Source of the DNA: Schmidtea nova
Taxonomy: Eukaryota
Length of the DNA: 64,000 nt
Assembly: GCA_044892505.1 (NCBI GenBank)
Contig: CM097883.1
Location: 308,698,001-308,762,000, forward strand
Direction: 5' to 3'
In this document: piece by piece, positions 4,335-33,742 of the stretch
How the letters are laid out: every line of letters begins with the position of its first letter
Numbering within the stretch: position 1 is the stretch's first letter
Notes under the pieces: model-generated
The model's database searches: none
Seen by the model: only the letters and a program-made list of their open reading frames with translations
Told to the model about the DNA's origin: nothing
Position numbers and translations under genes: made by a program

Positions 4335-5008
4335 AATAAAGATTAGATTAAAATGGACGTTTCAATTCTTTCTATTAATTTTATCGCCACTATGTAAATA
4401 TGACATCATCTATTATACAACATCTCATAATAAAATATGTTGTCCGGAGTAAAGTGCTTGATCCAGAAATTTTAAATCTGCCCATTTCTACCAATAACTA
4501 TAAAAGTAGAAAATGAAAATAAAATTTCTATATATTATTTCTGTACTTGACGATGAATTACCGTTTTATAGCTGATATTCATGTCTTTGCAAATCAAGAC
4601 TAACAAAATTCAGTTTAGACAATCCCAGTTATAAAGGATAATAATATTCAGATAATGTAAATATAGTTTGCGCTGCCTTCTTGCGTACCAGTTTGAGATT
4701 ACTATGATTATATAAAAATAACTCAGGTTAACAACATATTTTACAGTTTTTTAACAATTTAATAATTTAAATGAAACACATTTTTATTTTAAAATTCTTA
4801 ATAACTTATAAAATTATATTTCCTCTATCATCTGTAACGGCTACAATTTCTATGAAACGGCCTTTTCTCATTCGCCTATAATCTGAAATTTGATTGGCTG
4901 GATAATCAACACACACAATCTAGCTCATAGGTATTCCAAAACCAACAATGAAACATACAATTATGGCAAAATTACCATGTGAAATTGAATTATTACATTA
5001 ATAAAAGT

Positions 5009-5379
5009 ATGCTAATTGCGACTGAATCTGAAATAATTTCGACCAGTAACAGCACTCTGTTCGATATGCAAGTTCCATGGAAATTGTTCTTGATAATATC
5101 TGTCTTTTCAATCATTTTCTTTCTCTCTGTATTGGGAAACGGCATAATGGTTTGGATCATACTGAGCCAGAAATCAATGAGGAATTCTACGAATTTCTTT
5201 CTTGTCAACTTGTCTGCTACAAATGTGTTAATGGCGGTCACGCATATTTTTCCCAATGTCTACTATTCCGTAAACAATCAGTGGATATTCGGATTGACAT
5301 TGTGTAAGTTATCTCAATTCATCACAGCGTTTTCCGTAACAGTCACAGTTCTGACCTTTATTGGCATGGCGGCAGACAG
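5009..5379 (+). CDS. Class A GPCR, tachykinin-receptor-like, coding exon 1 (N-terminus to DR of DRY)
   Basis: ATG 5009; N-glycosylation site NST; FDMQVPW; TM1 GN; MRNSTNFFLVNLS; W.FG...CK; ends MAADR with a phase-2 donor AG|GTAAAC at 5380, the intron position known from tachykinin receptor genes. Confidence 0.9.
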
Positions 5380-5732
5380 GTAAACATTTTATTCATGAAT
5401 TTAAATTCCAAACCCTTTACGGTGTCTCTTAAGCAGGGTTTTTTATTCGTCGTTAAATACTGTTCCTCAGTGACTTGATTTGAATTGTTGCATTTATTAC
5501 ATGTAATAGCTTTAATTTGTCATCGTTTAGTTTTATCCAGAAGCTCCCCTAAAGCAGAAAATAAAGGGATATAAGTAGAGTAGGGTGAGCGCCCAGAAAC
5601 AAGAACAGACCCCCCGCCCACCCTGTTTTTGTTTTTAATTTTTTTTGTTTAAATTAAGTCTTTATTTTATTTTTTATTTATTTTTATTTATATAATTAAT
5701 TAATTAATTAATTTTTTAATTTTTTAAACAAG

Positions 5733-6215
5733 TAAAATACATTGAAATTATTTTGAATAGGATTTTCTACTCCCAGATTTTTCTCAGGCAAAAAGGGACT
5801 CTAGTAATTTTGAACTAAAATTTTAATGGTAAATAAAAACACACGTAAATTTTTAAACAAATAAAATACATTGAAATTATTTTGAATAGGATTTTCTACT
5901 CCCAGATTTTTCTCAGGCAAAAAGGGACTGGTAATTTTGAACTAAAAGTTTAATGGTAAATAAAAAAATGTGTAAATTTTTTAAACAAGTAAAATACATT
6001 GAAATTATTTTGAATAGGATTTTCTACTCCGAGATTTTCTAGGGCAAAAAGGGACTCTGGAATTTTGAACTGAAATTTAAATGGTAAATAAAAAACACAT
6101 GTAAATTTTTTTTTAAACTAGTAAAATAGATTGAAATTATTTTGAATAGTATTTTCTACTCCGAGATTTTCTAGGGCAAAAAGGACTCTGGCAATTTTGA
6201 ACTGAAATTTAAAAT
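5733..6215. repeat. Tandem array of four ~129-bp units
   Basis: Units start TAAAATA(C/G)ATTGAAATTATTTTGAATAG at 5733, 5862, 5990 and 6122. The upstream CCCCCGCCCC/TGTTTTTGTTTT block (about 5600-5640) recurs near 10230-10320. Confidence 0.85.
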
Positions 6216-6340
6216 AAAGATTTAAGAAAAGTGTATAAAGAAGAATAATTTAAAATAATGATTTATAAAAGAAAATAAAGTTGTTTAAATAAGTAGATTT
6301 ATTGACTGAATAAATATTTAAATTGTCTTATTATCTCACA

Positions 6341-6352
6341 AGCTATCCGGGC
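6341..6352 (+). promoter_or_regulatory. Atypical primer-binding site AGCTATCCGGGC, complementary to nt 1-12 of tRNA-Lys(UUU)
   Basis: Directly abuts the 5' LTR. Its reverse complement GCCCGGATAGCT equals the 5' end of animal tRNA-Lys(UUU) (GCCCGGATAGCTCAGTCGG...). No TGG-starting PBS is present. Confidence 0.8.
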
Positions 6353-7024
6353 ATGATAAAAGATATATTGAATGCAATCGAATGTTTTGATGGCGAAACC
6401 GTGAAAATCGATGAATGGTTCGATAAGTTTGAATTAATATGGAAGCTTCACAAATTCAATGGAAAAAAAGAAATTTTACCTGCTGTCATGAAGGGGAAGG
6501 CATTTATCACCTTGAAGGAAGCAGTGAAAAACGAAGATATTAGTTATGAAGAAATTAAAATATCATTGATACGAGCTTTCAGTGATCCCCCAGAAGCATG
6601 TTTTTCCAAGTTGTTAAACAAGAGATTCCAGATCGGGGACAATATTAACATTCATTTATCAGAAATGAAGAATCTGGCTTGTAACGCTGGAGATCTCTTA
6701 ATAAACATTATAATCAAATCCTTGCCAGTAGAAATCGCAGCTGAGGTGAGACGACAAGGATCAACGACGATCGACGCAATCGGTGACATCGTTTCACGAC
6801 TGAATCTAACTCATGGACATCAGTCTGCCTTTGTGGCGAAGATAAAGAAGATGCAATGTTATATTTGTAATGAAAATCATTTTGCCCGTAACTGTCCGAA
6901 CAAGAAAAAAATTCAATGTTCTAGGTGTGAAATGCTTGGACACCAATCCCGATATTGTAAATCGGGAAAAGACAACGGGATCGAGAATATTCAGGAGTCT
7001 CTCTCGATCCCAAAAAGATGTTAA
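6353..7024 (+). CDS. gag: Gag with two CCHC zinc knuckles
   Basis: ATG at 6353 right after the PBS; CYICNENHFARNC and CSRCEMLGHQSRYC; stop TAA 7022-7024. Confidence 0.9.
   Translation: MIKDILNAIECFDGETVKIDEWFDKFELIWKLHKFNGKKEILPAVMKGKAFITLKEAVKNEDISYEEIKISLIRAFSDPPEACFSKLLNKRFQIGDNINIHLSEMKNLACNAGDLLINIIIKSLPVEIAAEVRRQGSTTIDAIGDIVSRLNLTHGHQSAFVAKIKKMQCYICNENHFARNCPNKKKIQCSRCEMLGHQSRYCKSGKDNGIENIQESLSIPKRC
6964..7011 (+). promoter_or_regulatory. -1 programmed ribosomal frameshift signal
   Basis: In-phase slippery heptamer G GGA AAA (6964-6970), 6-nt spacer, then a perfect 10-bp stem GGGATCGAGA (6977-6986) / TCTCGATCCC (7002-7011). The pol frame is -1 relative to gag and open from 6961. Confidence 0.85.
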
Positions 7025-9696
7025 AAGAAAGACTCCTTTCCATAAATGGATCAAAACGTCTTTGTCTTATAGATTCCGGCTGCTCGACAACAATTATACG
7101 CGGAGAAGCCATCACATCACCCAACGCTCAAGTGTTCCTAGCAGATGGATCAATACTGCCAGTGAGCCAGAGCAAGGCAGAAATCGAATTAGAAGGAAAG
7201 TACTTTATCATTGACTGTTTTATTTCTAGAAAAATGATAGCGGGATATGATGTCATATTAGGTATGAACGCCATTATAGCACTAGGAGGAGTGACAATCA
7301 GTGAAGACGTCAGATTCGGATGTGAATTGAAATGTTTTATGGCTGTAAACGGAAACGAAGCTCAGAGTTTTTTAATTCAAAGGAAGAACTTCGAAGCAAC
7401 GTTCAACAAAGAATGGATGGTATCATGGAATTGGAACACAGAACCCCCTGTATCAATGTCAGATCGATATTCCAAGTTAGATCCAGATAAGCCCAAAGCA
7501 GGCCAGGCTCTCAAAGTCATCGAGCAGTGGGTCAAAAATGGATGGTTAGTCGAATATGACGAAAACCGGTTCGGTAAGCCTGTTGGAGCAGTAACTTTAT
7601 TTCCGGTTATGCAAAAGAACAAGAGCAAAATACGGCCAGTGTTCGATTTTAGAGCTTTAAATCATTATTTAGACGTCTATAGTGGAGAAACAGTAGTTTG
7701 CAATGAAACAATAAGAGATTGGAGAAAGAAGGGAAAGAAAATAGCGATTTTGGATTTATCTGATGCATACATGCAAATCCGGGTTGATGAGAGTATGTGG
7801 AAGTACCAGTCATGCATTGTAAACGGAAGGCGATATGCATTGACAAGACTAGGCTTCGGAATCAATATCGCTCCCAGTATTATGACAGAGATCGTTAACT
7901 ACGTGTTGGGTTTAAATGACAGAATAAAACAAGGAGCCAGTGCGTACATTGACGATATTTTTATCGACGAAGAAGTTGTCCCAGCTGAAGAAGTAAAAGC
8001 CTGGCTAGGAAAATTTAACTTGATGACGAAAGAAATTGAACGCCCCTCATCAACAAAAGCTCTAAGAATACTTGGATTATCAGTTCATATTGAGGATAAC
8101 TTATTAAAATGGAACCGAGCCAATGTCATCCGGTACGAATTTGAAGAAAAGAGAATGGACAGACGAGAACTGTATTCGTTATGCGGTCAATTAACCGGAA
8201 TTCTTCCAGTTGCAGGTTGGTTACGACCCGCGTGCTCTTATCTCAAACGATTAAGCGAAGGAGAATGGGACCGGCCAATCGACGTTCAATTACTAAACAA
8301 AGTTAAATGGTTAATAAAGGAGGTTGAAAAGAATGATCCAGCTCATGGTATATGGAAAGCACCAATGGACAGAGGAAATATTTTATGGTGTGATGCCAGC
8401 TCTATCGCCATAGGAGCAGCGCTAGAAATCGACGGAAATATTATGGAAGACGCATGCTGGTTGAGAAAGGAGAAGGACGTTAGGCACATTAACCTGTGCG
8501 AACTTGAGGCGATCGTTAAAGGCATCAACTTATGCATCAAATGGAATTTAAAGACTGTTAAGATCATGTCGGATAACAAATCCGTGGTAAGTTGGGTACA
8601 TAATGCCTTGACATCCGAGAGAAAGGTTTCAACTAAAGCTTCCTCAGAAATGTTAGTAAAAAGAAGGCTCAACATAATTAAAGAATTAATTATTGAATAT
8701 GAGATAAAGGCTGAAATAGAATACGTTCCAACAGACAAAAATAAATCCGACATATTAACCAGAATTCCCTCAAATTGGATTACGAAACATACGTGTAATA
8801 CGGCGTTGCTAGACCCGGGTGAAGATCCCATCAAGAACGCAGTTGAAATACACAAATTAAGCCATTTCGGAGGAGATCGGTTGAGGTTCTTGACCGAGGA
8901 AGCAGGAATTAACCTTTCTCAAAATGAGTTAAAAGAGATTGTCGAGAAGTGTGACAAATGTCAATCAATAGACCCTCATCCGGTTAAGATCAGCAAAGGG
9001 CAATTAGAGGTAAAAGATTCTTGGAAACGATTAGCTATCGATGTGACTAAATTACATCAAAGAAAATTTTTAACAATCATAGATTGCGGGACTTCTCGAT
9101 TTGCGATTTGGCGAGAAATACGAAACGAAAGCGCAGACGAAATTTGCAAACAGTTGGAACAGGTATTTTATGAAAGAGGACCTCCTGACGAGCTTCTGTT
9201 GGACAATTACTTATCGTTTAGGTCAGAAACTTTCACTTCTCTAATGAAAAGGTGGAGAATTAGAACTGAATTCAGATCCGCTAATAGACCAGCAGGCAAC
9301 GGCATTATTGAGAGGAACCATAAAACAATAAAAGCTGCAGTCACGCGATCGGAATGCTCAGTGCAAGAAGCAATTTACTGGTACAATAATACACCAGTAA
9401 ATGGTTCTTCCAGACCTCCGATAAAAGGCATTTACGCTTATGACCTAAGACTTCGATTTAATGAAACGAAAAGAACGGCTCAACAAATAGACAATGGCTT
9501 TCAGATTAACGACAAGGTGTGGGTGAAACCCGCGCAAAATCAACCATGTACATCTTCCTGGATGAGAGGAAGAATCATGAAGCTGCTGTCTCCGCATAAA
9601 GCAATCGTCGATTACGGAACCGTGGCAATGCCGCGTCATGTAGCTGACTTGAGGCACAGGAATGAAGATTTGTTAGAATCTCGGGGAGATGTATAA
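7018..9696 (+). CDS. pol: Pol polyprotein (protease, RT, RNase H, integrase)
   Basis: Uninterrupted 892-aa ORF: LIDSGC (protease), YIDDI (RT), WCDAS and SDNKS (RNase H), H..SH...CDKC plus D,D35E with NGIIERNHKTIK (integrase); no chromodomain seen. Confidence 0.95.
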   Translation: MLKERLLSINGSKRLCLIDSGCSTTIIRGEAITSPNAQVFLADGSILPVSQSKAEIELEGKYFIIDCFISRKMIAGYDVILGMNAIIALGGVTISEDVRFGCELKCFMAVNGNEAQSFLIQRKNFEATFNKEWMVSWNWNTEPPVSMSDRYSKLDPDKPKAGQALKVIEQWVKNGWLVEYDENRFGKPVGAVTLFPVMQKNKSKIRPVFDFRALNHYLDVYSGETVVCNETIRDWRKKGKKIAILDLSDAYMQIRVDESMWKYQSCIVNGRRYALTRLGFGINIAPSIMTEIVNYVLGLNDRIKQGASAYIDDIFIDEEVVPAEEVKAWLGKFNLMTKEIERPSSTKALRILGLSVHIEDNLLKWNRANVIRYEFEEKRMDRRELYSLCGQLTGILPVAGWLRPACSYLKRLSEGEWDRPIDVQLLNKVKWLIKEVEKNDPAHGIWKAPMDRGNILWCDASSIAIGAALEIDGNIMEDACWLRKEKDVRHINLCELEAIVKGINLCIKWNLKTVKIMSDNKSVVSWVHNALTSERKVSTKASSEMLVKRRLNIIKELIIEYEIKAEIEYVPTDKNKSDILTRIPSNWITKHTCNTALLDPGEDPIKNAVEIHKLSHFGGDRLRFLTEEAGINLSQNELKEIVEKCDKCQSIDPHPVKISKGQLEVKDSWKRLAIDVTKLHQRKFLTIIDCGTSRFAIWREIRNESADEICKQLEQVFYERGPPDELLLDNYLSFRSETFTSLMKRWRIRTEFRSANRPAGNGIIERNHKTIKAAVTRSECSVQEAIYWYNNTPVNGSSRPPIKGIYAYDLRLRFNETKRTAQQIDNGFQINDKVWVKPAQNQPCTSSWMRGRIMKLLSPHKAIVDYGTVAMPRHVADLRHRNEDLLESRGDV

Positions 9697-9969
9697 AGAA
9701 GAATAATTTAAAATAATGATTTATAAAAGAAAATAAAGTTGTTTAAATAAGTAGATTTATTGACTGAATAAATATTTAAATTGTCTTATTATCTCACAAA
9801 AAGGATATTAAACACGTGGTTAAATTAAATAAGCAATAAAACATGGAGAATTTTACAAAAACAAAAGAATGACATAATTTTTAAAATTTATTAAAAAACG
9901 GTAAAATTAAGGCAAAGTCAGAATAATAATAATAAACTTAGAAAAAATTTTGAAAATAAAAATAATAAA

Positions 9970-10026
<57 letters not shown>

Positions 10027-11579
10027 CTTGGAAAAATTTTGAAAATAATATTAATTTTGAAAANNNNNNNNNNNNNNNNNNNNNNNNNNNNNNNNNNNNN
10101 NNNNNNNNNNNNNNNNNNNNNNNNNNNNNNNNNNNNNNNNNNNNNNNNNNNNNNNNNNNNNNNNNNNNNNNNNNNNNNNNNNNNNNNNNNNNNNNNNNNN
10201 NNNNNNNNNNNNNNNNNNNNNTGAACAAGGACAAGAACAACCCCCGCCCCCACTCCCACTCCCCCGCCCCCTGTTTTTGTTTTTGTTTTTAATTTTTAAT
10301 TTTTTTTTGTTTTTGTTTTTAAAATTTTTTATAAAATCTTAAACTAAATACAATAAACTTTTTTATATTGAAATTTTCAAGAGATTTTTATGTTAAATAA
10401 AAAGCACGTGTAAATTTAGAAAAATGTTAAATAGATTTAAATGGTTAAATTAAATAGGCAATAAAACATGGAGAATTTTACAAAAACAAAAGATTGACAT
10501 TATTTAAGAAAACAGAGTGATATCAAGGCAATGTAAGAGTTTAAATGACTCTGGTATTTTTGTATTTGATTTTTTGGTCTGGTATTTTTGAACACAATAT
10601 TTTGGACTCATTATTTTCGATAAAGAATTTACGTCTGGGAATTTCCAAAAATTAAAAAGTGGTCAGAATTCAATAACTTTTATACCAATATACTGAGAAT
10701 TGAAAAGCGAACAATAAAGGTCAAAAAATTAAAATCATGAAAAAATCAAAATTTTATACGGAAAATGTCAGTCTCAGTAAAAGAGGGTAAAATACATAAA
10801 AACGTGGAAATATTTAAAAAAATTTTAAACTAAATACTTAAATCTAAATAAATTTATCATAATTAAATAAAAAAGTAAATAAATTCTATACGAATTTCAA
10901 AACTCAGTAAATAATTCACTGATTATTTTGTATTGAATTTATCAAGTAAAATGGTACATTAAATAAAAGCATGGAAATAATAAGTAAATTAAAGTTAGAA
11001 TTTTAAAATAATTTGTACTGGATTTATGAAAAATGGTAAAGTAAATAAATTAAAGATAGAATTTTAAAAATAAATTAAGAATTTAAAGATAAATAGAATT
11101 ATAAACAAATAATTTTTTAAAAAATAAGTAAATTAAGAAAGACGTGAGTTTTTGTAATAATATTAAAATGAATTGATTTTAAATGAACTTTTAAGGTAAT
11201 ATTTGAAAAATGTGAGAATTATTAAATATTTTTGAAATTTTTTAAAGTAATATATATTTTTTTACCAATAAAGTCAATGTAAAATTTCTTTTTAAACATT
11301 AACCAACAAGTAAATTTTTTAATTAGCAAATACAAAGTAAATATTTTTCACAATTAAAATTTTTAATTAATAAATACAAATCCTAATATTTTTCAATATA
11401 ATCATTTTTAAGGAAATGAACAAATAAATATAGTAAATAAAACACATGTAAATATTGAATTTATTTAGAATAAAAGTAGTTATTAAACAAGAGTTGTTAC
11501 AATTTTGTATAATAAGTTATAAAATATTGAATAAAGACATAAATTTTTAAAAATAATTGAAAAAATGGAAACAAGTAAA

Positions 11580-11590
11580 ATAATAATAAT

Positions 11591-11667
<77 letters not shown>
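11580..11667. repeat. (TAA)n microsatellite
   Basis: Direct reading; other (TAA)n tracts lie at about 9970-10023, 23540-23592, 30165-30200, 38283-38312 and 60720-60751. Confidence 0.95.
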
Positions 11668-17249: not shown

Positions 17250-19071
17250 AAGCTATAATTTACCGATATTATTTAATTAAAATGTACTTATCAGATTATA
17301 ATATGAATTATAATGTAAAAATTTTGTAAATCTTTTGTAAATCTTTAATTAATTTTATTATTTTTATTAAATTTTATAAAATTTATTTATTTTTTCAATA
17401 AATAAAATCAACGAAAGCAGTTTTCTAGTGAACCCAATTTCAATAATTGCCTAGTTATTACTGAAGACTTTTATGGTCCTTGAAAAAGAGAAAATTAAAT
17501 ATTTTGATTTCTGAAAGACTATTATCTATATTTATAAATGTTAGCTAAATAAGAGCGCAGATAAAAATCAACAACTTGGATTTGCTTATTTTTTGAATTT
17601 TTATTTTTTAATAACAGAGACGAATGAAAGCTGATGCGAACAGAGTGGTAATGTAAATATGATGACCCAAAATAACAGATATCAAAACATATTTTTATTT
17701 ATAGACTCTATAATGAAAATATTTCTTAAAAATANNNNNNNNNNNNNNNNNNNNNNNNNNNNNNNNNNNNNNNNNNNNNNNNNNNNNNNNNNNNNNNNNN
17801 NNNNNNNNNNNNNNNNNNNNNNNNNNNNNNNNNNNNNNNNNNNNNNNNNNNNNNNNNNNNNNNNNNNNNNNNNNNNNNNNNNNNNNNNNNNNNNNNNNNN
17901 NNNNNNNNNNNNNNNNNNNNNNNNNNNNNNNNNNNNNNNNNNNNNNNNNNNNNNNNNNNNNNNNNNNNNNNNNNNNNNNNNNNNNNNNNNNNNNNNNNNN
18001 NNNNNNNNNNNNNNNNNNNNNNNNNNNNNNNNNNNNNGTATTGTTTAAAAATAAATTTAAGAATAGAATTTGTTTAAATAATTTCTTGCAATATATTTCC
18101 CTGTACTTTTACAAAACATGTATTTTTTGGGAAAAGGCTGGGACCTAGCAGAGATATTTTTAACAATTATATCAGGATAATTTAGAGTGAAGGTATGTTA
18201 CTGTTGTATGTTTGTATAAGTGCAGAGTGCAATAAAAATGTATTTAATAAAATTATATTTAAGACAAATTTAATATGAATAAAACTAATTATATTATTTT
18301 CCAAATTGAAATTTTCTTAATAATAAAAAAACGAAATTTAGTTAATAAAATTAATTACTAACTTTCAATATATATTTTTTAATATTTTTTGATTATTTCA
18401 TTAGGATTATTTTATTATAATGAAATGATTTGTAATTTATTTCTAAGTTAAATTTTTTAAATCAAAAATTAAATTTTTATTATTTATTTTAAATTCCCTA
18501 TAATTTCTTACAATTGAAAATTGATACGCGTACTAGGAGATTATTTAGTTTATGTATGCTACTTTTGTATGTTTGTATATGTACAGAGTGCAATACAAAA
18601 ATAAATTAATAAAATTAAATTTTGAAAAAAAGACAAATTTTATCTCAACAAAAGTAATAACAGAAGTAATAATAGAAGAATGTCATTTAGTTAATAAAAT
18701 TAATTACTAACTTTCAATAACTTTTAACTTAATTTTTTTAAATTAAAAATTAAATTTTTATTATTTATTTTTAATTTCCTACATAATTTTTTACTATTGG
18801 GAATTGATCCGCGTGACTTTATTATAAATTCAGTTATAATTAGTTTAAAAAGAAAATATAAAAATAACATTGTTATGAAGAANNNNNNNNNNNNNNNNNN
18901 NNNNNNNNNNNNNNNNNNNNNNNNNNNNNNNNNNNNNNNNNNNNNNNNNNNNNNNNNNNNNNNNNNNNNNNNNNNNNNNNNNNNNNNNNNNNNNNNNNNN
19001 NNNNNNNNNNNNNNNNNNNNNNNNNNNNNNNNNNNNNNNNNNNNNNNNNNNNNNNNNNNNNNNNNNNNNNN

Positions 19072-19305
19072 GCTGTCCTTAGGGTCCTCTGAAACTGTTG
19101 ATGCATGATATTGTTGGCTTTCTCGACTTGTTAATGGGGCGAATCCTGGAACGAAAAAATGCAAACGTGGAATTGGAACCATGTTAAAGGTAAATTTGCC
19201 CAAATCAGCTTTCAATTGACCAGGAAATACCAAACATGCCGTCCCTCAACTTGCAGCGCTCATCAAATGATCAAATCCCGGTAAGCTGAAGTTGTCGATT
19301 TCCTT
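19072..19305 (-). pseudogene. TUBB: Beta-tubulin internal fragment
   Basis: [40 protein letters not shown] matches beta-tubulin [40 protein letters not shown]; the upstream YGDLNHL region is frameshifted; truncated by an N-gap. Confidence 0.92.
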
Positions 19306-23599: not shown

Positions 23600-24635
23600 A
23601 AATAAAAATGGCAATTTATTCATATAAATAAGAGAACACATTTTTTAAAATATATTAATGCAATATATTTCAACAGCTTAGCTGTCATCATCAGGCTTTC
23701 ACAATCTCAATAAAATATAAAATTGATCTTAATTATACGCTTAATAGTGATTACATAATTACATGTGCATAATCCAATAAAACTTTTATTTACCCTAATA
23801 AAATTAATTAAACATTCTCAAAATGCATGTAGATATTGCATTTTGTATATTTATTTTAGGATTAAATGATTTTATCATCAAAGCCTCACAATTCACACGT
23901 TCATAATAATTTTTAAAACCCCTAGAAAGTATTTTGAAATTAGAAATATTAATGCTCTTCTTGCAAGTCTTATTATGCTCAATAATGTTACTCTTTCCGC
24001 TCTTTCTGGCATGTTCTTGAACTCGTGTACAGAGATGACGGGCAGTCTCTCCAACGTATGTGGCATTACACCCATTACAAGTAAAACGATATACGAGATC
24101 AGAACACAGACCAAATGGCGTCACAGAGTTATTACTGAACATGTCCCGAACTTTGCAAGACTTAGAAATTATTTTAACATTAGTATTTCCAATATATTTT
24201 ATAATAGATTTTTTAAAATTTACAAATCCCTCAGAAAAAGGTAAAACTATAACAGAACCAATGTAATCATTCAAGTTACTTTTATTTATTTCATTATTAT
24301 TATTGCAATCAACACCATCATTCATTCCCATAACAACATCACCTGTTTCAATCAAAGGAGCACTATCAGATGTATTAAACGGATCAACACCAGGAGAAAT
24401 TTTTTCATCAATCACATTCAACTTATTAATACACTTATCAACAGTTTCACTCACCATTCGTTGCAAGAAACATTTTGAATATCCATTATTCTGTAGTAAT
24501 TTAAGTAATTTATCAATACTATTTATAGATTTACAATAAGTTGACGGCAATGTCCAAGAACGATAAACCAATCCCCTTATCATATTTCTTTTATATTTAA
24601 AATCACAAAACCTTTCCGGTGATGTATACAAACCA
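23600..24635 (-). mobile_element. Penelope-like element 3' portion (RT thumb + GIY-YIG ORF 23804-24631)
   Basis: (TG)LYTSPERFCDFKYK...LVYRS...LQNNGY; VYRFTCNGCNATYVGETARHLCTRVQEH...EALMIKSFNPKIN; 3' UTR carries a hammerhead motif. Confidence 0.92.
23653..23704 (-). ncRNA. Minimal type I hammerhead ribozyme motif
   Basis: Reverse complement reads CTGATGA-T-GACAGC-TAA-GCTGTT-GAAA-TATATT-GC. Confidence 0.65.
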
Positions 24636-32417: not shown

Positions 32418-33742
32418 GGTAAAGGTAGCGTATGGGAGGGCCAATTTTTAAAATTAAATAATTAATAAAAATTTATTAAATAAATTGATATTATATTAAA
32501 AATAAGTCTTAAATTATGCAATAAAGAAAATAAGCAAGTATTATATTGTTTAACTAATTACGACAACAAAACAAGAGTTTACATAATAAAAACCACATCA
32601 AAGCAAAATTAATGTGATACATATAAAGTAAAGTAAAAATAGACAATCTCAAGACAAATTTAATACCACCATATTATGTTACCATATTTTTTTCTTGCAT
32701 TGTTTCCATAAAGATATTAAATACTGCTCGATCATGAACGAACCGCCTTCTCCAAATAAATTCATCAACGTAGCTTGGTAAAAACGAATTAGGAGAACCG
32801 AACATGTACTTGAATTTACGTTTGCATAAGGCCCAAGAGCCTTCAATACTATTGGTATGCGCGCCTGTAACTGGATCGATGAAGTGCAAAGAATGATTGA
32901 CCCATTGATGTTCGTAAGGACCTAGTAGTGCGAGTGGTGTAGGATGAGAAGTGTTTCGATTCGGCCCCCCCCGTATACGTTGCATATTCATCCGACCAAA
33001 TCAATGTCCCTGGCAAAACTACTCTCCTAATAATCGGGAATATAGTTTCCTGTTTTCTATCTCTCACAAATTCCAAATGTACATTTTTAGTAGCTTCATC
33101 GAAGATACCAAACACCCAACCTGCAGCGGTGTTCCCCCTTGGCTCCCCTCTATGGTGCTTCAAACGCATGAACTTGGATTCATCGATCTGCACTCTACGT
33201 CCAATACCACCGAATACCAAAGGCTCTCGTAACAATTTCCAGCTACATAGATCTCTGAAGTACTGAAACCACTGTACTATTGCTGTTTTGGATATTCCAG
33301 TGTACAGTTTCACTTGTTTGATTGATGTTTCTGCGCTCCAAAAATATACCAATTCAACTAGTTGACTAAGCGGCAAACGGGAAGTTTCAAAATAACTCCC
33401 ATGTGTAACGTACCTTTTCTTCCGGTGTGAATTATTTCGTGTTCTATCACGACATTCGTATAGGTATTTATTCAGTACATTGTTTTCTGCTACCAATTTC
33501 ATGTTCCTTCCGCAAATTTCACATAAAGGTGGACCTTTAATAAGGCCATTATTTTCGCAAAACGTTATGCATTCTTTTGCATCGTTTGTAATTGCATATA
33601 ATTCTTTTAACAGCATGGTTATTTATAATAAAGTTTAATATAAATATTTCTTATTTATAATATAATATCAATTTATTTATTTAATAAATTTTTATTAATT
33701 ATTTAATTTTAAAAATTGGCCCTCCCATACGCTACCTTTACC
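32418..33742 (-). mobile_element. Merlin (IS1595/ISXO2-like) DNA transposon, complete ends
   Basis: ~89-bp TIRs starting GGTAAAGGTAGCGTATGGGAGGGCCAATT; 8-bp TSD TAAAACAT (32410-32417, 33743-33750). Confidence 0.95.
32674..33616 (-). pseudogene. Merlin DDE transposase split by one frameshift in a G8 run
   Basis: VQIDESKF, WSDEY and HTNSIEGSW catalytic motifs. ORFs 32849-33616 and 32674-32991 join if one G is removed from the run at 32965-32972. Confidence 0.9.

What the first reader, a model, noticed from the sequence alone, without database searches (positions are those of the whole stretch)
6341..6352. Primer-binding site complementary to the 5' end (nt 1-12) of tRNA-Lys(UUU): possible priming by a short 5' tRNA fragment
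Seen: the whole LTR-to-ATG spacer is AGCTATCCGGGC, with no TGG-starting PBS. Established: animal (human, Drosophila) tRNA-Lys(UUU) begins GCCCGGAUAGCU; canonical PBSs pair with the tRNA 3'-CCA end; known exceptions are anticodon-cleaved tRNA-iMet halves (copia, Ty5) and self-priming (Tf1). Inference: the match begins exactly at tRNA nt 1 and places nt 12 (D-stem) next to the LTR, the geometry needed for minus-strand priming by a 12-nt 5' tRNA fragment, either made by the host or cut by the element's RNase H in a Tf1-like way. AGCTA pairs with nt 8-12, so this is not just acceptor-stem self-complementarity. I do not know of this priming mode having been described, but cannot check the literature.
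Basis: partly seen in the sequence, partly recalled or inferred. Interest (0 to 1): 0.9.

Follow-up and report, generated by a model that had tools for sequence, protein, structure and literature searches.

The report
Retrotransposon primer site matching tRNA 5' end
An intact, very small retrovirus-like mobile element has, where such elements normally carry a site matching the tail (3' end) of a tRNA, a 12-base site matching the first 12 bases of a tRNA, and dozens of distant relatives do the same with different tRNAs, which points to a so far undescribed way of starting reverse transcription.

Summary
Window 6232-9798 is an intact 3567-bp LTR retrotransposon. It has identical 109-bp LTRs, a 5-bp target duplication, gag, a -1 frameshift site, pol in the order PR-RT-RH-IN, and a polypurine tract. 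The only bases between the 5' LTR and the gag ATG are AGCTATCCGGGC (6341-6352). This is the exact complement of nt 1-12 of animal tRNA-Lys(UUU), as quoted in papers.

It is not chance. About 57 of 87 related sequences (pol 31-46% identical) carry a 12-mer of the same build at the same place, directly after the LTR's terminal ACA. These come from metagenomes, a whipworm, a barnacle and a leafhopper. The part facing tRNA nt 7-12 is nearly constant. The part facing acceptor nt 4-6 varies. Variants match tRNA-Phe(GAA) and tRNA-Lys(CUU) 5' ends exactly.

There is no self-primer complement in the LTRs and no canonical TGG site. One distant sponge relative has a canonical 3'-end site.

Best reading: minus-strand synthesis is primed by the 5'-terminal 12 nt of a tRNA, cut after nt 12. 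This resembles Tf1 self-priming but acts in trans. Priming itself, the cutting enzyme and the exact host tRNA are inferred. I found no prior description.

The parts
6227..6231 (+). target-site duplication, left copy (AAAAG)
   Evidence: read; identical to 9799-9803
6232..6340 (+). 5' LTR, 109 bp, TG...CA; TATAAAG near its start and AATAAA at 6274-6279 and 6309-6314 (read from sequence, function unverified)
   Evidence: 100% identical to 9690-9798
6341..6352 (+). primer-binding site AGCTATCCGGGC, complementary to tRNA nt 12 to 1 (GCCCGGAUAGCU); it fills the whole space between the LTR and the gag ATG
   Evidence: family conservation
6353..7024 (+). gag, 223 aa, with two Cys-His zinc knuckles near its C-terminus (nucleocapsid-like)
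   Evidence: ORF; knuckles read from the translation; no strong Pfam hit
7009..7015 (+). CCCAAAA heptamer of the X XXY YYZ type in the gag frame, inside the 64-nt gag/pol overlap (6961-7024); probable programmed -1 frameshift site
   Evidence: pol lies in the -1 frame relative to gag
6961..9696 (+). pol open frame (first ATG at 7018; 892 aa from that ATG). By the model: protease about residues 1-100, RT to the YIDD hairpin at 307-317, thumb-like helices holding Pfam DUF7047 at 382-438, RNase H at 454-570, integrase at about 604-880. The stop codon lies inside the 3' LTR
9683..9689 (+). polypurine tract GGGGAGA, abutting the 3' LTR and lying inside pol coding sequence
   Evidence: read; relatives have ...GATCAGGGGGGAG at the same place
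9690..9798 (+). 3' LTR
9799..9803 (+). target-site duplication, right copy (AAAAG)

Best explanation
The 12 bases are the element's primer-binding site, and they pair with the 5'-terminal 12 nucleotides of a host tRNA: the acceptor-stem 5' strand, U8, A9 and the first three bases of the D stem. In this host the tRNA is most likely tRNA-Lys(UUU). Proposed course, inferred unless marked shown. (1) Gag's zinc-knuckle region helps open the acceptor and D stems so that tRNA nt 1-12 anneal to the site. (2) The tRNA is cut after nt 12, at the end of the 12-bp RNA:RNA duplex. The cut is most likely made by the element's own RNase H, as in Tf1 self-priming. This leaves a 3'-OH that faces the last base of U5. 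(3) Reverse transcriptase extends it through the short U5-R to give minus-strand strong-stop DNA. (4) Plus-strand DNA primed at the polypurine tract later copies the 12-nt RNA primer to its physical 5' end. This regenerates exactly 12 nt of site without needing a modified base as a stop, and it rewrites the site to the host tRNA's sequence at each cycle. Shown: the complementarity, its exact register between the LTR end and tRNA nt 1, its conservation and covariation in the family, and the absence of a self-primer and of a canonical site.
For: The element is intact and recently inserted: identical LTRs, a target duplication and open gag and pol. It therefore has a working primer site, and the only non-LTR, non-coding bases are these 12. 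They match nt 1-12 of animal tRNA-Lys(UUU) exactly. At the same position, directly after the LTR's ACA, related sources carry AGCTAT+NNN+GGC. The counts are GCCGAAA type 18, GCCGCGA 12, GCCTAGA 9, GCCGTGA 6, GCCGGGA 4 and GCCCGGA 2, plus single variants. GCCGAAATAGCT is the 5' end of human and Drosophila tRNA-Phe(GAA). L042's AGCTAGCCGGGC changes the base facing nt 7 as well and equals the tRNA-Lys(CUU) 5' end. L076 changes the bases facing nt 12 and nt 7 (CGCTACCGAGGC) and stays 12 nt long. Conservation drops to background at position 13, the first base past the 12-mer (commonest-base share 0.33-0.52). In five elements the gag ATG starts right there. Each type is spread over pol lineages only 40-55% identical. 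Two divergent barnacle elements share the Phe type, so the site appears to follow the host, as expected if it is recopied from the primer. Strings of this form are real tRNA 5' ends. The reverse complement of the 12-mer matches no more than 9 of 12 bases in the LTRs, the same as in control sequence (window). No TGG-type site exists. A distant sponge relative, L086, has a canonical TGG site at the homologous place, so the place is the primer site. A 2019 survey lists only three known primer types: whole tRNA 3' end, half tRNA cut in the anticodon stem, and self-primer (PMC6317226).
Against: No primer, strong-stop DNA or tRNA fragment was observed, so all mechanism steps rest on geometry and analogy. 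The host's tRNA set is unknown: there is no tRNA gene in the window or in any fetched locus. Five common variants (GCCGCGA, GCCTAGA, GCCGTGA, GCCGGGA, GCCTCGA) could not be matched to a documented eukaryotic tRNA. The 12 nt alone do not fix the anticodon. A cut inside the D stem of a tRNA has no known precedent. The motif counts partly depend on a pattern that I set myself. The unbiased set, with the LTR end fixed by two copies, is 8 elements plus one near-match. The literature check was limited to open-access full text.
Confidence: 0.75

Rival explanations
1. The pairing is the same, but the primer is a short 5' tRNA fragment already made by a host nuclease and recruited as such. It is not a whole tRNA cut in place by the element's RNase H.
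For: 5' tRNA fragments are abundant in animal cells, including ones from Lys-TTT and Lys-CTT (papers). A ready-made 12-mer would need no unwinding of the tRNA.
Against: From what I know of the field, the fragments reported end in the D loop or later (14 nt or more), not at nt 12. The probes and fragments in the papers are all longer than 12 nt. A longer fragment would leave an unpaired 3' tail against the LTR's ACA and would still need trimming. The fixed 12-bp length across different tRNAs suggests a measured cut, as in Tf1.
Confidence: 0.15
2. The 12-mer binds the tRNA 5' end, or is kept for another reason, but is not the priming site. It could be a packaging or translation-control element next to the gag ATG, or a target of host 5' tRNA fragments. 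Priming would then happen elsewhere or by another route.
For: The site sits 0-40 nt before the gag start codon, so a role in translation cannot be excluded. Priming was not observed.
Against: There is no other candidate site. The site abuts the LTR's terminal CA with zero spacing in nearly all members (ACA in 51 of the hits). A distant relative has a canonical site at the same spot. An element would not keep a host silencing target.
Confidence: 0.06
3. Tf1/sushi-type self-priming: the 12-mer pairs with the 5' end of the element's own transcript.
For: The site length (12 against 11 nt) and its position abutting U5 resemble Tf1.
Against: The reverse complement of the 12-mer is absent from the window, even with 2 mismatches. 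In 42 relatives its best match in the upstream LTR is 6-9 of 12, no better than in control coding sequence.
Confidence: 0.02
4. Chance resemblance of a short spacer to a tRNA 5' end.
For: A single 12-mer in 64 kb is not significant by itself.
Against: The same build recurs at the same position in about 57 sources across pol lineages 31-55% identical, with variants equal to three documented tRNA 5' ends.
Confidence: 0.01

Closest known systems
Tf1/sushi self-priming (Schizosaccharomyces pombe Tf1 and relatives)
   Same: A short site (11 nt in Tf1, 12 here) abuts U5 and pairs with the extreme 5' end of an RNA. The primer 3'-OH must then be made by a cut at the end of an RNA:RNA duplex. In Tf1 this cut needs the element's RNase H (established knowledge; the mode is listed in PMC6317226).
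   Different: Here the partner is a host tRNA acting in trans, not the element's own transcript. The pol is not a chromovirus pol.
copia / Ty5 / 1731-type priming by a 5' fragment of tRNA-iMet (half-tRNA)
   Same: The primer is a 5' piece of a tRNA made by an internal cut, not the CCA end.
   Different: In those elements the site pairs with an internal stretch ending in the anticodon stem, and the primer is about 39 nt. Here pairing starts at nt 1 and the cut would fall after nt 12 in the D stem. The tRNAs used are Lys- and Phe-like, not iMet. The pol order is PR-RT-RH-IN, not the copia order.
Canonical tRNA 3'-end priming (retroviruses and most LTR retrotransposons; lentiviruses use tRNA-Lys3)
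   Same: A host tRNA acts as primer, the site abuts U5, and a polypurine tract lies at the 3' LTR. The tRNA species likely used here is the one lentiviruses use. A distant sponge relative, L086, still has a TGG-type site.
   Different: The opposite end of the tRNA is used, 12 nt instead of 18, and there is no TGG. The stop for plus-strand copying would be the tRNA's physical 5' end, not a modified base (inference).
Odin retrotransposons (Wang and Han 2022, PMC9040795)
   Same: Both are small gag-pol LTR elements of invertebrates whose pol resembles retroviral pol more than Ty3 pol. Here the best solved-structure matches are foamy-virus and HIV RT and MMTV integrase.
   Different: Odin was reported only from sea anemones and is defined by a dual RNase H. 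The model here shows no room for a tether domain. The Odin paper says nothing about primer sites. No Odin sequence could be compared.

Membership tests
Autonomous LTR retrotransposon | Two LTRs with TG..CA ends, flanked by a short target duplication | tested here: met
   109-bp LTRs, 100% identical; 5-bp AAAAG duplication
Autonomous LTR retrotransposon | gag with zinc knuckles and pol with protease, RT, RNase H and integrase | tested here: met
Autonomous LTR retrotransposon | Polypurine tract abutting the 3' LTR | tested here: met
   GGGGAGA at 9683-9689; conserved G-run in relatives
Autonomous LTR retrotransposon | Primer site complementary to the 3'-CCA end of a tRNA | tested here: not met
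   No TGG after the LTR; no TGGN + acceptor complement in the element; the site pairs with nt 1-12 instead
Tf1/sushi self-priming elements | Site complementary to the first 11 or so nt of the element's own transcript | tested here: not met
Tf1/sushi self-priming elements | RNase H-dependent cut of an RNA:RNA duplex creates the primer | not testable with these tools
   Needs observation of natural intermediates
copia/Ty5-type half-tRNA priming | Site complementary to the anticodon stem-loop region of tRNA-iMet | tested here: not met
   The complement is nt 1-12 of Lys- and Phe-type tRNAs
copia/Ty5-type half-tRNA priming | Ty1/copia pol order (integrase before RT) | tested here: not met
   The order is PR-RT-RH-IN
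Odin / retrovirus-type pol | Dual RNase H (degenerate tether plus a second RNase H) | tested here: inconclusive
   The model has about 135 residues between the YIDD hairpin and the RNase H, made of three strands and three helices (thumb-like, = DUF7047). No second RNase H-like fold is evident. No domain-level fold search was done
Odin / retrovirus-type pol | RT groups with lokiretroviruses and Odin in a phylogeny | not tested
   No Odin sequence was available. Animal virus sequences were not fetched, by rule
Bel/Pao | Pao-type protease and gag Pfam families (Peptidase_A17, DUF1758/1759) | tested here: not met
   Absent in the window protein and in all 113 relatives' precomputed Pfam lists
Ty3/gypsy | Ty3-type RT-RNase H Pfam families (PF17917/PF17919) | tested here: not met
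   Absent from the family. Proteins carrying them match only at E 4e-7 to 4e-4. RNase H matches PF00075 and PF13456 weakly

The most novel reading that the evidence does not exclude
A whole, widespread lineage of small animal LTR retroelements starts reverse transcription from the first 12 nucleotides of a tRNA. This would be a fourth primer type, beside the whole tRNA 3' end, the anticodon-cut half tRNA and the self-primer. The primer would be released by the element's own RNase H cutting an RNA:RNA duplex inside the D stem. The site would be rewritten to each new host's tRNA at every cycle because plus-strand synthesis runs off the tRNA's 5' end.
Probability: 0.55. Interest if true: 0.9.

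Novelty: new variant of a known kind. Interest (0 to 1): 0.82.

Why it matters
If this is right, there are four consequences.

- **A fourth primer type.** Textbook accounts and surveys list three primer types for LTR retroelements (PMC6317226). This would add a fourth. It would also link tRNA priming and Tf1-type self-priming mechanistically: same geometry, with the partner in trans.
- **Blind spot in annotation pipelines.** Primer-site finders search only with tRNA 3' ends (for example the method in PMC13524379). Elements of this kind would be reported as lacking a primer site. A 5'-end library would recover them.
- **A new place for host control.** 5' tRNA fragments are abundant and poorly understood. 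They could compete for this site, as 3' fragments do for canonical sites.
- **A simpler stop for plus-strand copying.** It suggests how a primer site can be copied without a modified-base stop, and how an element can adapt its site to a new host.

Tried and rejected
- **Chance:** rejected by the family data.
- **Self-priming:** rejected.
- **Hidden canonical site:** none found.
- **RNA structure around the site:** the 5' leader folds no better than shuffles, z = -0.05.
- **Host tRNA genes:** none in the window or in any fetched locus, so the host tRNA could not be read directly.
- **Naming the other variants from the literature:** GCCTAGA, GCCGCGA, GCCGTGA, GCCGGGA and GCCTCGA occur in no paper of the library. 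My recollection that nematode tRNA-Phe starts GCCUCGA is memory, not a test.
- **IMG/VR scan:** it shows that such strings are real tRNA 5' ends, mostly Phe and Thr. Those are not the hosts' tRNAs.
- **Prior description:** no paper holds any of the six site 12-mers in a retrotransposon context, and phrase searches found nothing. Searches were format errors.
- **Family name:** I first recalled Odin as widespread, but the paper limits it to sea anemones and does not mention primer sites.
- **Closest relatives:** L081 and L082 lack the 5' region. P0110 returned no DNA. L087 is embedded in a tandem array, with no LTR found.
- **First motif scan:** my first relaxed scan took the first hit and gave false positives. 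It was replaced by the stricter count with a reverse-strand control.
- I did not send it elsewhere and used the allowed alignment A1 instead.
- **Sequences and rules:** The N runs were left alone.

Full report
**What is there.** Window 6232-9798 is a complete LTR retrotransposon of only 3567 bp.
- The two LTRs (6232-6340 and 9690-9798) are 109 bp, start TG, end CA and are 100% identical. The repeat finder gives 110 nt only because the next base is A on both sides.
- A 5-bp target duplication, AAAAG, flanks the element (6227-6231 and 9799-9803).
- gag (6353-7024) ends in two Cys-His knuckles.
- pol is open from 6961 to 9696 in the -1 frame. The heptamer CCCAAAA (7009-7015) lies in the 64-nt overlap and fits a programmed -1 frameshift site.
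- pol has protease, RT, RNase H and integrase in that order.
- The pol stop codon lies inside the 3' LTR, and the polypurine tract GGGGAGA (9683-9689) abuts that LTR.
- The window holds one copy and no solo LTR.

With identical LTRs and open frames, this is a recent insertion of an element that looks functional.

**The observation.** Between the last base of the 5' LTR (CA at 6339-6340) and the gag ATG (6353) there are exactly 12 bases, AGCTATCCGGGC. Their reverse complement is GCCCGGATAGCT. [quoted passage not shown] A zebrafish probe for the 5' fragment of tRNA-Lys-TTT ends ...GAGCTATCCGGGC (PMC4688932). No TGG follows the LTR. A canonical site built from the same acceptor stem (TGGNGCCCGGA, up to 2 mismatches) is absent from the element's + strand. 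Taken alone, one 12-mer in 64 kb means little.

**The family test.**
- The pol protein has more than 100 relatives at 31-46% identity. Most lie on 3.5-4.5-kb metagenome contigs. Others come from Trichuris, the barnacle Amphibalanus, the leafhopper Macrosteles, Hydra and the sponge Sycon.
- I fetched 80 metagenome loci and nine loci by protein look-up.
- In every clade member where two LTR copies fix the LTR end independently, the bases right after the LTR are AGCTAT + NNN + GGC. These are L009 and L010 (AGCTATCTAGGC), L029 and L033 (AGCTATTTCGGC), Trichuris suis L084 (AGCTATCGAGGC, target duplication GACCC), and Amphibalanus L085 and L088 (AGCTATTTCGGC).
- The closest full-length relative, L089, has AGGTATCCGGGC. 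This is the window's 12-mer with one change, in a copy whose LTRs have already diverged.
- A pattern scan finds the same build in about 57 of the 87 sources held at the time of the scan, nearly always after ACA and 0-40 nt before gag. The counts are GCCGAAA type 18, GCCGCGA 12, GCCTAGA 9, GCCGTGA 6, GCCGGGA 4 and GCCCGGA 2 (window and L073), plus single variants.
- Most of the remaining sources lack the region because the contig is cut.
- The looser pattern gave 76 hits on the + strand and 21 on the reverse strand of the same sources, so the looser hits include background. The AGCTAT...GGC hits after ACA are the signal.

**Covariation with tRNAs.**
- GCCGAAATAGCT starts human tRNA-Phe(GAA) (PMC10505166). 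A Drosophila tRNA-Phe 5' probe ends ...GAGCTATTTCGGC (PMC7038984). This type is found in the insect and the barnacle.
- L042 reads AGCTAGCCGGGC. The change at the base facing tRNA nt 7 goes together with the acceptor part, and the complement GCCCGGCTAGCT is the 5' end of tRNA-Lys(CUU) fragments in many papers.
- L076 reads CGCTACCGAGGC. The bases facing nt 12 and nt 7 change, and the length stays at 12.
- L040 changes the base facing nt 7.
- Single-base departures (L005, L080, L089) look like decay of the Phe or Lys types.
- Column shares show the pattern. The three LTR-end bases are 96-100% constant, the bases facing nt 4-6 vary, and from the first base past the 12-mer conservation is at background (0.33-0.52). 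Columns fixed by my own pattern are not evidence.
- In five elements the gag ATG begins immediately after the 12-mer. So the conserved unit ends exactly where a tRNA begins.
- The base before it, the A of the LTR's CA, cannot pair with C13 of these tRNAs. So pairing also ends exactly at nt 12.

**Who follows whom.** A clustering of intact pol frames shows each 12-mer type scattered over lineages that are only 40-55% identical. Two divergent elements of the same barnacle share the Phe type. The site thus seems to track the host rather than the element's descent. That is what is expected if the site is recopied from the primer in each cycle.

**Rivals tested.**
- Self-priming of the Tf1 kind needs the complement of the site in the LTR. 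It is absent from the window, even with 2 mismatches. In 42 relatives the best match in up to 350 nt upstream is 6-9 of 12, the same as in control coding sequence.
- The leader has no unusual fold.
- A distant sponge relative, L086, has at the homologous spot a canonical site: CA, three bases, then TGGTACCGAAACCCGG. This shows that the spot is the primer site and that the 5'-end type is derived within this group. That the sponge site looks like the 3' end of a Phe-type tRNA is my reading from memory, not a test.

**Mechanism.** The only way a tRNA paired through nt 1-12 can prime synthesis towards U5 is with a 3'-OH on nt 12, so the tRNA must be cut in the D stem.
- The nearest precedent is Tf1. 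There the first 11 nt of the transcript pair with the site and the RNase H domain is needed for the cut (established knowledge). Retroviral RNase H is also known to cut RNA:RNA duplexes in arrested primer complexes. I therefore favour an in-place cut by the element's RNase H over a ready-made host fragment, but nothing here tests this.
- A consequence of the geometry is that plus-strand DNA can copy the primer to its physical end. This explains why the site is 12 nt in every member and stops at nt 1.
- From established knowledge of tRNA modification, nt 1-12 of tRNA-Lys3 carry only m2G10, which still pairs. tRNAs with G9 usually carry m1G9, which would block copying. All sites whose position is fixed by two LTR copies face an A9.

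**Caveats.**
- No tRNA gene lies in the window or in any fetched locus. The host is an unidentified, very AT-rich animal genome: about 25% GC, with GPCR and ABCD-transporter exons.
- A scan of IMG/VR for GCCNNGATAGCTCAGT, followed by ARAGORN, shows that such strings are true tRNA 5' ends. It also shows that the same 12 nt can start different tRNAs. There, GCCCGGATAGCT starts Thr, Asn and Phe genes, and the whole class is mostly Phe and Thr.
- So "a tRNA 5' end" is solid, while "Lys(UUU)" is likely for an animal but unproven.
- Five variants could not be named.

**What kind of element.**
- None of the Pfam families typical of Bel/Pao or of Ty3/gypsy RT-RNase H appears in the protein or in its 113 relatives. 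Proteins with the Ty3-type families match only at E 4e-7 to 4e-4.
- The nearest solved proteins are retroviral: MMTV integrase, and HIV and foamy-virus RT. Ty3 matches only by its integrase. The fold search agrees.
- The model (mean pLDDT 81.5) shows only three strands and three helices between the YIDD hairpin and the RNase H. This is a thumb, which is where Pfam DUF7047 lies. I see no tether, so the dual RNase H that defines Odin elements and retroviruses is not evident.
- Odin elements were reported only from sea anemones, and their paper does not mention primer sites.
- I leave the lineage unnamed.

**Novelty.** A 2019 survey states that three primer types were described: complete tRNA, half tRNA cut in the anticodon stem, and self-primer (PMC6317226). 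A 2026 survey searched only with the 12 nt at tRNA 3' ends (PMC13524379). None of the six commonest site 12-mers appears in any paper in a retrotransposon context; all hits are tRNA probes. Phrase searches found nothing. The library holds only open-access text, so an older subscription paper could have been missed.

Noticed in passing
window 5718-6213; 9955-10025; 11579-11667; L085 2371-3631 and 8087-10526; L088 2165-2749 and 7733-9649: The element sits at the edge of a 129-bp tandem array, with (AAT)n arrays a few hundred bases downstream. Both barnacle copies are likewise flanked on both sides by satellite arrays. This could reflect an insertion preference or better survival in satellite DNA.
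   Followed up: partly
L086 4557-4900 / 8320-8663, site at 4904: A distant Sycon ciliatum relative (gag-pol in one frame, with DUF7047) has a canonical TGG-type primer site. This suggests the 5'-end type arose inside this group.
   Followed up: partly
L017, L020, L004, L023, L001 and others: Many metagenome contigs of the family have long terminal redundancy, up to 2.9 kb, with a period of one element minus one LTR. This fits assembly cycles through collapsed LTRs, tandem copies or circular forms.
   Followed up: no
window 7009-7015: CCCAAAA heptamer in the gag/pol overlap: a probable -1 frameshift site.
   Followed up: partly
window 23804-24631 (-), 32849-33616 (-): ORFs with a weak GIY-YIG nuclease match and an IS1595/ISXO2-like DDE transposase match. 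These are probably remains of other mobile elements.
   Followed up: no
window 4979-5383 (+), 46649-47119 (+), 18724-19233 (-): Host gene pieces: a rhodopsin-type GPCR exon just upstream of the element, an ABC-transporter (ABC_membrane_2) exon, and a weak tubulin C-terminal match. The host is an animal with about 25% GC.
   Followed up: no
L090 2830-3870 (-): A Tc1/mariner-type transposase gene lies next to a truncated family member on a metagenome contig.
   Followed up: no
   Followed up: no
pol residues 382-438 (window 8161-8331): In the model, Pfam DUF7047 coincides with the three-helix thumb between the RT palm and RNase H. This may explain this 'domain of unknown function'.
   Followed up: partly
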